Origin: Dimorphilus gyrociliatus
Lineage: Eukaryota; Animalia; Annelida
Assembly (NCBI GenBank): GCA_904063045.1
Contig: CAJFCJ010000005.1
Coordinates: 2,598,165-2,662,164 of the forward strand
DNA length: 64,000 bases
Reading direction: 5' to 3'
Shown here: in pieces, positions 55,912-60,097 of the stretch
Layout of the letters: each line of letters starts with the position of its first letter
Position numbering within the stretch: position 1 is the stretch's first letter
The notes under the pieces: model-generated
The model's input: the letters and a program-made list of their open reading frames with translations, nothing else
Database searches by the model: none
What the model was told of the DNA's origin: nothing
Made by a program: the position numbers and the translations under genes

Positions 55912-58548
55912 ATGATGAACAGTGCTGCCCGTGTTTTTTCTAATAAATTTCACAGCCTTCTCTTAAAATGTCTTCAGAGAAACTGTGCATCGGTTTGTCT
56001 TTATTATATTTACCTTTATGAATTTTTGTAAACATTTTATCTAATATAATTTTTTTCGGAAATATAATTAAAAATTTTGAGCGATAATAGCAAAACGTTA
56101 ATATTCAGGTCGCGGGATTTCCCTCTTTTGTGAAAGTTGTCGAAGTAGGACCAAGAGATGGCTTACAAAATGAGAAAGAAATTATTCCAACTGAAGTTAA
56201 AGTTGAATTCATAAACAAACTATCATCAAGTGGACTGTCAGTGATTGAATGTACAAGTTTTGTTTCACCTAAATGGGTACCCCAAATGGCTGATCACAAT
56301 GATGTTATGAAGAAAATATCTAGGAATAAGTCTGTTAAATATACTGTTCTTACACCAAATAAACAAGGATATATTTCAGCTGTTAGTATATAATTTTTTA
56401 TCAAAATTATATAATCAAAGAGAAAGATTAATTATAATTTATCTGAATTTCATTGTTCATCTTTTATTTGTTCTTCCTATCACAGAAAGCTGTAAATTCG
56501 GATGAAGTTGCTGTATTTGGAACGGCATCAGAATCCTTTAGTAGGTGAATATTCGAAAAACTAGAATGCAAGACCATACCGATAAATCATTGTCTATTAT
56601 TGAGGTCAATTAATTCTGTTTTATTGATACAGAAAGAATATTAATTGTTCAATAGACGAATCTTTGAAAAGGTTCACAGATGTTGTAGATTCGGCTAAAT
56701 CTGATAATATACCGGTGAGGGGATATGTGTCTTGCGTTGTTGGTTGTCCATACGAGGGTTTCATTGAACCAGTTAAAGTTGCTGAAGTTGCTGAAAAAAT
56801 GTTCCAGATGGGATGTTACGAAATATCTCTTGGTGACACTACTGGAATTGGTATTGAAACTTTAAATCGTAATTACATAATAGATGAATTGATAATTTTT
56901 AATTATTTAGGAACACCGCAAAGATTCAAAGACATGTTGAAAGCTGTTAGCCAAAGAGTACCTATTGAAAGACTAGCAGTTCATTGCCATGATACATACG
57001 GGCAAGCTATCGCTAATATTTTTGCTGCCCTGCAGGTAACAATATCAAATATATGCTGGCAATTAAATTTTCAATAGGGATAATAATTAATTTCAGATGG
57101 GTGTTAGCGTGGTTGATAGTTCAGTTTCCGGTTTAGGAGGATGCCCGTACGCAAAAGGTGCCAGCGGAAATGTATCGACTGAAGATGTTATCTATCTATT
57201 GAATGGCTTAGGCCTAAAACACGTGAGTCTATTATTCAACAGGAAAATTGAATAGAAGTTAGCTAAAACGCATATGCTACACCCCGTTCAATCGTATTCC
57301 ATTGTCATCGGATTAGTATTTCCCTAACTACAATGAATTTTTTATAAGGGCTAGCCGTGTAATTAAAAAAAAAACACACATATAGACACTTTTTTCATAC
57401 AGTCCTTATTATAACTACCACCACCGCCACTACCAATATCGTTTTTTTCTATCATTTTGCCTTTTTTTTTATAAGGATAATTATAAATAATTGTATTATA
57501 TAATGGTAAGAGAATCTTGTAAAGATGCTTATCAATTTTAATAATTATATATTGTAATACGTAGTCGGAGGTAAATGAATTGTCAGAGGAAAGATTAACA
57601 GGTTTGTAAGAATGTAGAATGAAAATGATATTTTGTAGCAAAAGTAAATTTTTGAATAGAATTTAAAGAAGCGTTTATGCTATTCGATAAAGATAAGGAC
57701 GGAGTTGTTTCTATGAAAGAGTTAGGTAGTGTTATGAGATTATTAGGCCAAAATCCAACAGAGGCCGAGCTTCAGGACATGATGAACGAAATTGACGCAG
57801 ACGGTTAAATTTTTTTTGTCTATTCTTTTATTTAGGTTGTTTATTAAATAGATTTAAAACTACTCAATAATAACATCTTCTACTTGTTTTTGACAAGTAG
57901 AAGAACAATCAACAACAGCAAAAAAAAACCCTAAGTTTTTAACCAAATTAATTAGTTCGTTATTTTTTTTAAATGTTAAATTAGGGAATGGAGCTATCGA
58001 TTTTGAAGAATTTCTTGAAATGCTCACAAAAAAAATGACAGAAAGTAGCGAAGAAGATGAAATAAAAGAAGCTTTTAAAGTATTTGATAAAAATTCTGAT
58101 GGTGTTATATCCTTTGACGAATTACGTCACGTACTTATAAATTTAGGCGAAAATATTAAAGACGATGACGTAGCCGAAATAATTAAGGCTGTCATTACGT
58201 CCGATGACGATATTAGTGAAGGTATTCGCTATGAAGATTTCAGGCGGATGGTCAAATCTGGCGGTTGTAGCACTTTTATTCAATTTACATTAAAAAAAGA
58301 CAAAAACAACATTGAATTTTTCTCTCTCTCAATAATATTAATAATAAAGATAGAAAAAAGAAGGAAAAATTCAATAATTTTTACCATTCTTCTTTTTCAG
58401 TTCTCATATTTATCTATTATTTTTTGTCTTTTCTCAGGGAATCGACATTAAACGAATTATTGAAGCTGGACAATTTATAAACAAACATTTGAATAGGCCT
58501 ACGCAATCGAAAGTTGCTCGTGCTATGATTTCTCAGTCTCATTTATGA
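55912..58548 (+). CDS. HMGCL: Hydroxymethylglutaryl-CoA lyase, multi-exon; last exon 58438..58548
   Basis: Transit-peptide-like [13 protein letters not shown]; [12 protein letters not shown]; [13 protein letters not shown]; EISLGDT; [10 protein letters not shown]; [14 protein letters not shown]. Terminal exon [29 protein letters not shown] follows intron 57223..58437 (phase 0). Confidence 0.93.
57504..58451 (+). CDS. Calmodulin-like EF-hand protein nested in the HMGCL last intron
   Basis: ATG-only first exon 57504-57506, then exons from 57565, 57661 and 57985. EF1 [14 protein letters not shown]2 [14 protein letters not shown]3 [12 protein letters not shown]; EF4 is degenerate. Contains [12 protein letters not shown]. 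The 3' end is uncertain. Confidence 0.85.
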
Positions 58549-58582
58549 CGATCTTTTTTCATTTAAATTTACATTATTAAAT

Positions 58583-58720: not shown

Positions 58721-60097
58721 ATGGTTTACGTCTTATGCATATACACATTTAGTTTGTTTACAAGTTTATTATCATTGGAATTAAGTGGAATTTATAATTT
58801 GTTTAATCAAGAAATTAACATTCAACATTTTGAAATAGATCAACAGTTACGATGTACTGAAAATTCAAATTGCTCATCCATATTTTTCTTTAATATTTCA
58901 TATAATAATTTTGGTCGTGTACCCCCATTAAAACCATTTGACAATATCATCATTTTATCTTTGGCTAATTGTAGTATTAAAAGAATTGATAGGAATGTAA
59001 CATTCCCAAATAAATTAAGAAAACTATATCTTGATCGTAATCCTCTATTGTCGTTATCTTATCAACCATTTTTAAAGCTTGGACTATTGCAAACAATGAC
59101 GTTGAGACAAGTTTTATCGATAACTGACAAGTTGGAATATAAACCAAGAAAAAGTTATCATAAAATATTGGATGATGTCACAAAGATTTGCTTCGAGTTG
59201 TATAGAAATTTCAAAAATTCCCCCGTTCAGTATAAATTACGGATTGATTTAAGAATGAATGGCTTAAATGGATTTTGGTCCTCAATCCATAATTTAATAG
59301 ATAGTACAAGAACGTCGAAATTCGGAATTGAATTAATGGTTGATGAAACTTTTAGGTATACAGCTAAACGCTGGAATAATACTGATAAGAGTATAAACTT
59401 CATCTCGGAACAATCAAGAAGATGTCCTTCTAATTCTAAAGTTCACTTGAAAATTAATTATTACGAACCAGTTGATGAGAACGCGGTTTTTAAATGTAAA
59501 GCTACTGGCTGCTTAGCTACAGATCCCGAAATTTGGACGCAAATTCAAGTTGAGAGTAATAAATACATAAACAGGATTGCTTGTAACTTTGATCGTAATA
59601 TATCAATGCTAAAGTCAGATAGTCTAGAAATCATAAGGACAGCATCGTCGTCAGCCTTAACGTGTAAGATACCGCTAAGCAGCATCGGCGAAAATGATTG
59701 TTTCGCCTGCCATCATAAACAACCGTTATCAACTACAATTTGTAGTACATATCTAAATAAAAAGAAATTCAGCAATGACATACTTTTTCTCACTGCAACT
59801 AGCTTTCTAATATTCCTGTCAATTCTTATTTTCACATTGTTTTTCTGCGATAAAAGAGGTAGACGAAAGATTCGACGACGTTTCTGGATGTGGAAACAAA
59901 AGGGTGAAAGCCACCGACGAACTACAGCAACAACAAAGCCACAATCAGATAATCAAGAATCATCGTCACAGAGTTCCGGAGACTCTTGTTCGGAATATAG
60001 ACAAACAATTTATCATAATATGTCAGTTTGTAAATTTAATGAGACAATATTTGAAAAGTATTGTAATTACGATAGAAAGCAAGCAGAAAAGTTTTAA
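58721..60097 (+). CDS. Single-exon LRR + Ig-like + TM receptor-like protein
   Basis: Signal peptide; LRRs IIILSLANCSIKRI and LRKLYLDRNPLLSL; Ig-like AVFKCKATG...W...LTC; TM ILFLTATSFLIFLSILIFTLFFC followed by a basic stop-transfer segment. Confidence 0.65.
   Translation: MVYVLCIYTFSLFTSLLSLELSGIYNLFNQEINIQHFEIDQQLRCTENSNCSSIFFFNISYNNFGRVPPLKPFDNIIILSLANCSIKRIDRNVTFPNKLRKLYLDRNPLLSLSYQPFLKLGLLQTMTLRQVLSITDKLEYKPRKSYHKILDDVTKICFELYRNFKNSPVQYKLRIDLRMNGLNGFWSSIHNLIDSTRTSKFGIELMVDETFRYTAKRWNNTDKSINFISEQSRRCPSNSKVHLKINYYEPVDENAVFKCKATGCLATDPEIWTQIQVESNKYINRIACNFDRNISMLKSDSLEIIRTASSSALTCKIPLSSIGENDCFACHHKQPLSTTICSTYLNKKKFSNDILFLTATSFLIFLSILIFTLFFCDKRGRRKIRRRFWMWKQKGESHRRTTATTKPQSDNQESSSQSSGDSCSEYRQTIYHNMSVCKFNETIFEKYCNYDRKQAEKF

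What the first reader, a model, noticed from the sequence alone, without database searches (positions are those of the whole stretch)
57223..58548. Calmodulin-like gene nested on the same strand in the HMGCL last intron, possibly sharing the terminal exon in another reading frame
HMGCL needs the exon at 58438 (GIDIKRII...SKVARA) to finish its fold, so its 1.2-kb last intron contains a complete 4-exon calmodulin-like gene in the same orientation. The CaM-like frame has no stop after FRRMVKSG. It either reads through AT-rich sequence or splices from G|GT at 58263/58264 to the same AG at 58437. Both routes end GNRH* at 58451, inside the HMGCL exon, in a different frame from HMGCL. HMGCL splicing must skip three internal exons with good splice sites, and chimeric HMGCL-CaM isoforms are conceivable. 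Same-strand nesting with a dual-frame exon is rare.
Basis: seen in the sequence. Interest (0 to 1): 0.75.

Follow-up and report, generated by a model that had tools for sequence, protein, structure and literature searches.

The report
Calmodulin-like gene nested in HMGCL intron
In the tiny marine worm Dimorphilus gyrociliatus, a calmodulin-like gene lies on the same strand inside the last intron of the HMG-CoA lyase gene and has no stop codon of its own until 12 bases into the host's final exon. This is a tidy example of a known layout (nested genes) and not a new mechanism, and no RNA data could be read to show how its transcript ends.

Summary
The single-copy HMG-CoA lyase gene has seven coding exons. 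Its last two (57097-57222 and 58438-58548) match human HMGCL without a gap, at the same position and phase as the human exon 8|9 boundary. The 1215-base intron between them holds a four-exon calmodulin-like gene on the same strand. That gene keeps three canonical calmodulin intron positions and three intact EF-hand loops.

Its reading frame has no stop after ...FRRMVKSG. The first in-frame stop is TAA at 58449-58451, inside the HMGCL exon and shifted by one base from the HMGCL frame. The only close relative in the databases (83% identical) also lacks a stop there and diverges completely after KSGGC. So this is not an assembly error, and the tail is not conserved coding sequence.

A donor model learnt from this genome ranks all nine real donors of the locus high, and ranks this site like a random GT. 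I favour an unspliced terminal exon that runs into the host's last exon and uses its poly(A) site.

Same-strand nesting is common in this genome, so interest is modest.

The parts
55912..55992 (+). HMGCL coding exon 1 (start codon and presequence-like N-terminus)
   Evidence: Read from the sequence. Exon lengths sum to 993 nt, phase 0.
56109..57035 (+). HMGCL coding exons 2-5 (56109-56381, 56486-56544, 56633-56850, 56911-57035), separated by introns of 104, 88 and 60 nt
   Evidence: Pfam HMGL-like hits. tblastn of a bacterial HMG-CoA lyase and a sea-cucumber HMGCL gives colinear matches exon by exon.
57097..57222 (+). HMGCL coding exon 6. Contains [14 protein letters not shown] and ends ...LNGLGLKH|GTGAGT in phase 0.
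   Evidence: Matches human HMGCL PDB chain residues 224-263 at E 6e-17. The 42-residue exon spans 224-265.
57223..58437 (+). HMGCL last intron (1215 nt), the host of the nested gene. It lies at the same position and phase as human HMGCL intron 8.
   Evidence: the flanking exons abut at chain residues 265|266. A human exon ends at c.876, which is codon 292 (PMC9136170).
57223..57502 (+). Presumed promoter and 5'UTR of the nested gene (inferred). GC is 0.30, against 0.17-0.30 in the other introns. There is no ATG between 57336 and 57502.
   Evidence: No CAGE or ATAC data could be read, so this is inference only.
57503..57505 (+). Calmodulin-like start codon, followed directly by an intron (ATG|GTAAGA), as in canonical calmodulin genes
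   Evidence: Donor score is at the 100th percentile of all GT sites.
57565..57601 (+). Calmodulin-like exon 2 ([12 protein letters not shown] plus 1 nt)
   Evidence: Its 3' boundary has the same position and phase as vertebrate CALM exon 2|3, just before EFKEAF (own knowledge of the CALM gene structure).
57660..57803 (+). Calmodulin-like exon 3 (144 nt): EF-hand 1 and the start of EF-hand 2
   Evidence: Pfam EF-hand_1 and EF-hand_7 hits. 78% identical to a calmodulin over 49 aa.
57985..58263 (+). Calmodulin-like exon 4, conserved part: rest of EF-hand 2, EF-hand 3 and a degenerate EF-hand 4, ending ...FRRMVKSG
   Evidence: Pfam EF-hand hits at 4e-15. 82% identical to relative P0001 up to KSGGC.
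58264..58437 (+). 174-nt stretch (3n, GC 0.21) with no in-frame stop. It is either a translated, unconserved tail of the calmodulin-like gene or a weak-donor intron. It also holds the polypyrimidine tract and acceptor of the HMGCL last intron.
58438..58548 (+). HMGCL last coding exon (GIDIKRII...[13 protein letters not shown]). It also carries the calmodulin-like stop codon (TAA 58449-58451) in a frame shifted by one base.
   Evidence: Matches human HMGCL chain residues 266-295. Stop position.
58576..58581 (+). ATTAAA, 28 nt after the HMGCL stop: the likely shared poly(A) signal (inferred)
   Evidence: The next gene's ATG is at 58721.

Best explanation
This is a real, independently started calmodulin-like gene. 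It lies on the same strand inside the ancestral last intron of the single-copy HMG-CoA lyase gene of Dimorphilus gyrociliatus.

Shown:
- HMGCL must join 57222 to 58438 to encode its C-terminal helix and its -SHL end.
- The nested gene keeps three canonical calmodulin intron positions and three intact Ca-binding loops.
- It has no stop codon until TAA at 58449-58451, inside the host's last exon.

Inferred:
- The nested gene has its own promoter in 57223-57502 but no terminator. Its last exon runs unspliced from 57985 through the 174-nt stretch into the host's last exon.
- Translation stops four codons into that exon, in a frame shifted by one base, and the transcript ends at the host's poly(A) site.
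- In host transcripts, the three short internal introns (59, 58 and 181 nt) are removed as units. That pairs every internal acceptor with its own nearby donor.
- This leaves 58437 as the only free acceptor for the HMGCL donor at 57223.
- The absence of a good donor after KSG and of an internal terminator is what lets the host gene work.
For: Host gene:
- The penultimate exon matches human HMGCL chain residues 224-265 and the last exon matches 266-295, with no gap.
- A bacterial lyase and a sea-cucumber HMGCL match colinearly, exon by exon.
- A human exon ends at c.876, the same position and phase.
- HMGCL is single copy in the assembly.

Nested gene:
- EF-hand Pfam hits.
- The nearest paralogue in the genome is only 54% identical, and the locus is unique.
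- The ATG|GT mini-exon and the 144-nt exon 3 match the calmodulin gene structure.
- Relative P0001 is 82-83% identical up to KSGGC, is open there too, and is then unalignable.

No stop.

Unspliced route:
- The candidate donor at 58264 is at the 33rd percentile of all GT sites. The nine real donors, none of them used for training, are at the 82nd-100th percentile.
- The stretch is 3n and open.

Background:
- The genome paper reports that splicing in this species is adapted to short introns, and that trans-splicing and operons are absent (PMC7854359).
Against: - No RNA, CAGE or annotation evidence could be read for this locus. No protein from this gene appeared in the word search (85-270 aa) or among the 50% representatives.
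- The donor model carries only about 0.8 bit beyond GT. About 6% of the introns it was trained on score as low as the 58264 site.
- The 174-nt stretch has intron-like GC (0.21) and is not conserved.
- Translating it adds a strongly hydrophobic 19-residue segment (Kyte-Doolittle hydropathy (KD) 2.33) to a soluble-type protein, which looks costly.
- The acceptor at 58437 is strong and only 174 nt downstream.
- An own promoter is inferred, not shown.
Confidence: 0.55

Rival explanations
1. The calmodulin-like transcript removes 58264-58437 (G|GT...AG|G) and joins the host's terminal exon. This gives a 158-aa protein ending KSGGNRH*, an INK4a/ARF-like sharing of one exon in two frames.
For: - A GT lies at exactly the point where similarity to calmodulin and to relative P0001 ends.
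- The acceptor at 58437 is strong (94th percentile of all AG sites).
- The stretch has intron-like GC of 0.21.
- Splicing would avoid a hydrophobic, unconserved tail.
Against: - The donor GCG|GTTGTA scores like a random GT: 33rd percentile of all GT sites and 6th percentile of the trained introns.
- A good donor here would compete with the HMGCL donor for the only acceptor HMGCL can use.
- Under splicing, the 3n length and the absence of stops (1-2.5% by chance, times 1/3) would be pure coincidence.
Confidence: 0.27
2. One gene, two ends. The EF-hand exons are alternative 3' exons of HMGCL. Exon 6 would be joined in frame to 57565, giving a lyase without its C-terminal helix fused to a calmodulin-like domain, with no independent promoter.
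For: - 57222 ends in phase 0 and 57565 starts in phase 0, so the fusion is in frame.
- No stand-alone protein of this gene was found in the 85-270 aa range. A fusion of about 450-510 aa would have been invisible to all my searches.
Against: - The ATG|GTAAGA mini-exon with A at -3 and G at +4 sits exactly where calmodulin genes have it.
- The acceptor at 57564 is very weak (6th percentile of all AG sites).
- The fusion would lack residues equivalent to human 293-325 and the -SHL end.
- No HMGL-plus-EF-hand protein appeared among the 150 best representatives.
Confidence: 0.08
3. The calmodulin-like gene is a decaying or silent copy. Its lost stop codon would be a symptom, and the open tail would be chance.
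For: - No annotation or transcript-derived protein was found.
- EF-hand 4 is degenerate, with a 3-residue insertion.
- The tail is unconserved.
Against: - All four exons are intact, with strong donors.
- Three EF loops keep all ligand positions.
- The gene is 82% identical at protein level to a relative, while the sequence immediately after it is unalignable. That contrast indicates constraint on the coding part.
- The same degenerate EF-hand 4 is conserved in the relative.
Confidence: 0.07

Closest known systems
Same-strand nested (host/nested) gene pairs
   Same: A complete protein-coding gene with its own start lies inside one intron of an unrelated host gene on the same strand, and the host splices over it. 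Such pairs are common in mammals, where same and opposite orientations are about equally frequent (PMC11694760). According to earlier scan notes they are also common in this genome.
   Different: The nested gene here is not fully contained. Its stop codon, and presumably its 3'UTR and poly(A) site, lie in the host's last exon. Most described nested genes bring their own terminator, which can cause premature polyadenylation of the host (PMC3192792 and PMC13309782, titles and abstracts only).
CDKN2A (p16INK4a / ARF): one downstream exon read in two frames from two promoters (own knowledge)
   Same: Two unrelated proteins would come from transcripts with different first exons, ending in a common exon translated in different frames.
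   Different: The overlap here is only four codons plus a stop, so the second frame encodes nothing of substance. Whether the exon is reached by splicing at all is doubtful.
Human F8B, a transcript that starts in F8 intron 22 and continues into F8 exons 23-26 (own knowledge)
   Same: An internal promoter in a host intron gives a same-strand transcript that is 3'-coterminal with the host.
   Different: F8B reads the shared exons in the host's own frame and encodes part of the host protein. Here the nested product is an unrelated EF-hand protein.
Calmodulin and calmodulin-like proteins
   Same: Four EF-hand units, 46-54% identity to calmodulins, and the gene structure ATG | 37 nt | 144 nt | rest. 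The introns after the ATG, before EFKEAF and inside DADG|NG are at the vertebrate CALM positions (own knowledge).
   Different: - Not calmodulin proper, which is over 90% conserved among animals.
- EF-hand 4 has a 3-residue insertion and lacks the canonical loop.
- The later calmodulin introns are lost.
- There is no stop at the canonical end.

Membership tests
HMG-CoA lyase (HMGL-like, PF00682) | HMGL-like TIM-barrel domain | tested here: met
   Pfam hits on exons. 51-76% identity per exon to a bacterial lyase.
HMG-CoA lyase (HMGL-like, PF00682) | Full colinearity with a solved HMGCL, including the C-terminal segment after the barrel | tested here: met
   Exon 6 matches chain residues 224-265 and the last exon matches 266-295 of 2CW6/3MP3. 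All exons are colinear.
HMG-CoA lyase (HMGL-like, PF00682) | GLGGCPYA loop with the catalytic cysteine (human Cys266, own knowledge) | tested here: met
   [15 protein letters not shown] aligns to [15 protein letters not shown].
HMG-CoA lyase (HMGL-like, PF00682) | C-terminal peroxisomal signal (human -CKL, own knowledge) | tested here: inconclusive
   The protein ends in -SHL. This fits the [SAC][KRH][LM] rule from memory, but localisation was not tested.
Calmodulin / calmodulin-like EF-hand proteins | Two EF-hand pairs | tested here: met
   EF-hand_1 and EF-hand_7 hits on exons 3 and 4. Alignment to calmodulins.
Calmodulin / calmodulin-like EF-hand proteins | Four canonical 12-residue Ca-binding loops, as in calmodulin proper | tested here: not met
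   The loops [24 protein letters not shown] and [12 protein letters not shown] are canonical. The fourth ([13 protein letters not shown]) has a 3-residue insertion and no canonical pattern. The gene is therefore calmodulin-like, not calmodulin.
Same-strand nested gene | Host exons flank the nested gene and are joined across it | tested here: inconclusive
   Homology requires the 57222|58438 junction.
Same-strand nested gene | The nested gene has its own promoter | not testable with these tools
   There are only indirect signs: the canonical ATG mini-exon and a 167-nt stretch upstream with no ATG. CAGE data exist under PRJEB37657.
Same-strand nested gene | The nested gene lies wholly within one intron | tested here: not met
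   The conserved coding part does, but the first in-frame stop is at 58449-58451, in the host exon.
Dual-frame shared exon (INK4a/ARF type) | One exon is spliced into two transcripts and translated in two frames | tested here: inconclusive
   The two frames overlap for 12 nt plus the stop. The donor needed for splicing is weak. Translation was not testable.

The most novel reading that the evidence does not exclude
The nested calmodulin-like gene has handed over its stop codon, 3'UTR and terminator to the host gene as a maintained arrangement in dinophilid worms. In this reading, the translated stretch, which is built from the host's polypyrimidine tract, gives the D. gyrociliatus protein a C-terminal tail anchor. 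That would make a membrane-tethered calmodulin-like Ca sensor whose expression is coupled in cis to a ketogenesis and leucine-catabolism enzyme.
Probability: 0.08. Interest if true: 0.6.

Novelty: new member of a known kind. Interest (0 to 1): 0.33.

Why it matters
If RNA data confirm it, this locus shows how a very compact genome can hold a gene inside a gene on the same strand without conflict. The nested gene would bring a promoter and short, self-contained introns but no terminator and no final donor site. Host transcription would then not be cut short, and the host's last acceptor would stay free.

It would also add a calmodulin-like gene that appears to be missing from the protein collections I could search, within the limits of those searches. 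It is a warning for annotators as well: a plain ORF call here gives a 216-aa protein with a hydrophobic tail that may be only a by-product of a polypyrimidine tract.

It does not open a new mechanism.

Tried and rejected
- **Alignment trick.** I searched with an alignment of a 303-aa bacterial lyase plus the worm's exons given by reference. The aim was to reach the worm's own 330-aa (or a fused 450-510-aa) HMGCL protein past the length filter. The list was swamped by bacterial lyases, so the search was wasted.
- **Other protein searches.** The word search with the 137-aa HMGCL open frame found no protein of this worm or a near relative at 75-240 aa. The big representative search with exon 4 found only P0001 as a close relative.
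- **Exact look-up.** The 143-aa genomic ORF 58020-58448 is not in the collection.
- **First intron mining.** The first attempt (open frames of at least 45 codons) did not converge on a motif and recovered none of the known introns. It was replaced by a stricter set (at least 70 codons, at most 150 nt).
- **Relative's tail.** I considered that the relative's tail (…KHGNTF*) also ends in its HMGCL exon, because both tails end G-N-x-x-stop. Back-translation is too ambiguous without the DNA, so I dropped it as evidence.
- **Haliotis ...ASGC... end.** I considered it as support for a conserved Cys. That protein is closer to the worm's ordinary calmodulin-like gene L002 (62%) than to this one (47%), so I dropped it.
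- **Assembly indel.** An indel removing the stop is rejected, because the relative has the same open frame through KSGGC and there is no homopolymer there.
- **Trans-spliced operon.** Rejected: the genome paper reports that spliced leaders and operons are absent.
- **Retrocopy.** Rejected: the gene has three introns at calmodulin positions.
- **Joined models.** All searches were done exon by exon, by reference.

Full report
**Organism and setting**

The window is 28-41% GC and is G000:C5:2598165-2662164 of a 77.9-Mb assembly in 349 contigs. Earlier scan notes name the genome Dimorphilus gyrociliatus. This fits the published assembly of about 78 Mb in about 350 scaffolds (PMC7854359). It is an annelid contig, not a human one.

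**The host gene**

Reading the sequence and translating exon by exon gives seven coding exons:

| Exon | Coordinates |
|---|---|
| 1 | 55912-55992 |
| 2 | 56109-56381 |
| 3 | 56486-56544 |
| 4 | 56633-56850 |
| 5 | 56911-57035 |
| 6 | 57097-57222 |
| 7 | 58438-58548 |

- Together they make 993 nt, or 330 aa.
- Pfam finds HMGL-like on the exons.
- A bacterial HMG-CoA lyase and a sea-cucumber HMGCL match all exons colinearly.
- Against solved structures, exon 6 matches human HMGCL chain residues 224-263 (E 6e-17) and, being 42 residues long, reaches residue 265. The exon at 58438 matches residues 266-295. The two exons therefore abut with no residue missing or extra.
- The pathogenic human variant c.876+1G>C (PMC9136170) shows that a human exon ends at coding base 876, which is codon 292. 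With the 27-residue offset of the crystallised chain, this is chain residue 265. The 1215-nt intron 57223-58437 is thus the ancestral last HMGCL intron, in the same position and phase 0.
- HMGCL is single copy in the assembly.
- The last exon ends in -SHL. From memory this fits the peroxisomal signal rule; human HMGCL ends in -CKL.

It rests on homology and not on RNA.

**The nested gene**

On the same strand inside that intron lie:

- ATG 57503-57505, followed directly by GTAAGA
- exon 2, 57565-57601
- exon 3, 57660-57803 (144 nt)
- exon 4, from 57985

Exons 3 and 4 hit the EF-hand families and are 46-78% identical to calmodulins. Three intron positions match the vertebrate CALM genes (own knowledge): the intron after the ATG, the one before EFKEAF, and the phase-1 intron inside DADG|NG. 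The gene is therefore a DNA-level paralogue and not a retrocopy.

Loops 1-3 keep all Ca-ligand positions. Loop 4 has a 3-residue insertion and is degenerate.

The nearest paralogue in the genome is only 54% identical, and the locus is unique.

**The missing stop**

After ...FRRMVKSG (58263) the frame runs on for 62 more codons to TAA at 58449-58451. That stop lies 12 nt inside the HMGCL exon, in a frame shifted by one base.

- The 174-nt stretch 58264-58437 is a multiple of three.
- Its GC is 0.21. The introns here have 0.17-0.30 and the exons 0.33-0.45.
- It has no in-frame stop, while the other frames have 7 and 2.
- This happens in 1.1% of dinucleotide shuffles and in 2.5% of comparably AT-rich stretches of the window.

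**The one close relative**

The word search and the search of 1.84 billion representatives found a single close relative, P0001. It is a 104-aa ORF called on an 18.5-kb Logan contig.

- It is 82-83% identical from MTESSE... to ...KSGGC.
- It then continues with an unrelated 26-residue tail before a stop.

So the lack of a stop at the calmodulin end is real and shared. It is not an indel error. The coding part is constrained and what follows is not. Whether the nesting is conserved therefore stays open.

**Spliced or unspliced?**

I took 200 kb next to the window. I then mined introns that join two open frames of at least 70 codons and learnt donor and acceptor matrices by EM on 54 of them.

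- The donor matrix is weak, about 0.8 bit beyond GT.
- Even so, it places all nine homology-defined donors of this locus, none of which was in the training set, at the 82nd-100th percentile of all GT sites.
The alternative at 58267 is at the bottom.
- Only four GT dinucleotides exist in the stretch.

The splice route thus has no motif support, although about 6% of the trained introns score as low.

Arguments for splicing remain:

- The acceptor at 58437 is strong.
- The stretch looks like intron.
- If translated, it adds a 19-residue segment with a hydropathy of 2.33, six residues from the end.

That hydrophobicity appears in all three frames and is absent from the relative's tail. I therefore read it as a by-product of the polypyrimidine tract.

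**Most likely mechanism (inference)**

- The nested gene starts from its own promoter in 57223-57502, where the last 167 nt contain no ATG.
- It has no terminator. It runs into the host's last exon, stops at 58449-58451 and uses the host's poly(A) signal (ATTAAA at 58576).
- In host pre-mRNA, the three short internal introns are removed as units. The genome paper reports that splicing in this species is adapted to short introns.
- That leaves 58437 as the only unpaired acceptor for the donor at 57223.
- A strong donor after KSG, or an internal poly(A) site, would damage HMGCL. Their absence fits this picture.

**What could not be done**

- No RNA, CAGE or annotation evidence was reachable.
- The worm's own HMGCL protein (330 aa) lies outside the length range of every stop-free reference I could give. 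My attempt to reach it with an alignment failed.
- A fusion protein of 450-510 aa would also have been invisible.
Exons were searched separately, by reference.
- The statement that the gene is missing from public protein sets holds only for 85-270 aa and for cluster representatives.

**Comparison and verdict**

Same-strand nested genes are a known kind.

- In mammals the two orientations are about equally frequent (PMC11694760).
- Earlier notes of this scan mention same-strand nesting 43 times in this genome. One case is said to run into the host's last exons. Those notes are leads only and I did not check them.
- Trans-splicing and operons are reported absent in this species.

The special point here is that the nested gene's stop lies in the host exon. 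It is a sequence fact, but the overlap is four codons. I rate it a new member of a known kind, of modest interest.

Noticed in passing
L002:1333-1782 (G000:C6, about 1868.6-1869.0 kb): The worm's calmodulin-type gene, 83% identical to a calmodulin, is one uninterrupted exon for about 140 residues. It then departs from calmodulin at ...GQINYE|GYFKFLSL. This is the place of the conserved last calmodulin intron, so a short final exon (FVQMMTAK-like) should lie downstream.
   Followed up: partly
window:56851-56910: HMGCL intron 4 is 60 nt, a multiple of three and free of in-frame stops. A plain ORF call (56664-57077) therefore reads straight through it. This is a local example that short, open 3n introns occur by chance here.
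   Followed up: partly
window:58721-60097: An uninterrupted 458-aa ORF on the + strand starts only about 170 nt after the HMGCL stop. It has a hydrophobic N-terminus, a weak LRR_4 hit (E 0.0085, below cut-off) and a hydrophobic segment near residue 370 followed by basic residues. It is probably a single-exon membrane-protein gene.
   Followed up: no
window:58590-58700: A (TA)n-rich microsatellite fills most of the short spacer between the HMGCL 3' end and the next gene.
   Followed up: no
P0002 (JGI metagenome protein, 179 aa): This database 'protein' is a calmodulin ORF that reads past ...QVNYEEFVK into low-complexity sequence, that is, into an intron or UTR. ORF callers applied to eukaryotic DNA produce such false tails, which is relevant to how P0001's tail should be read.
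   Followed up: no
L091-L110 (G000:C5:2398165-2598164): The 200 kb upstream of the window contains 4163 N, which is withheld or masked sequence.
   Followed up: no
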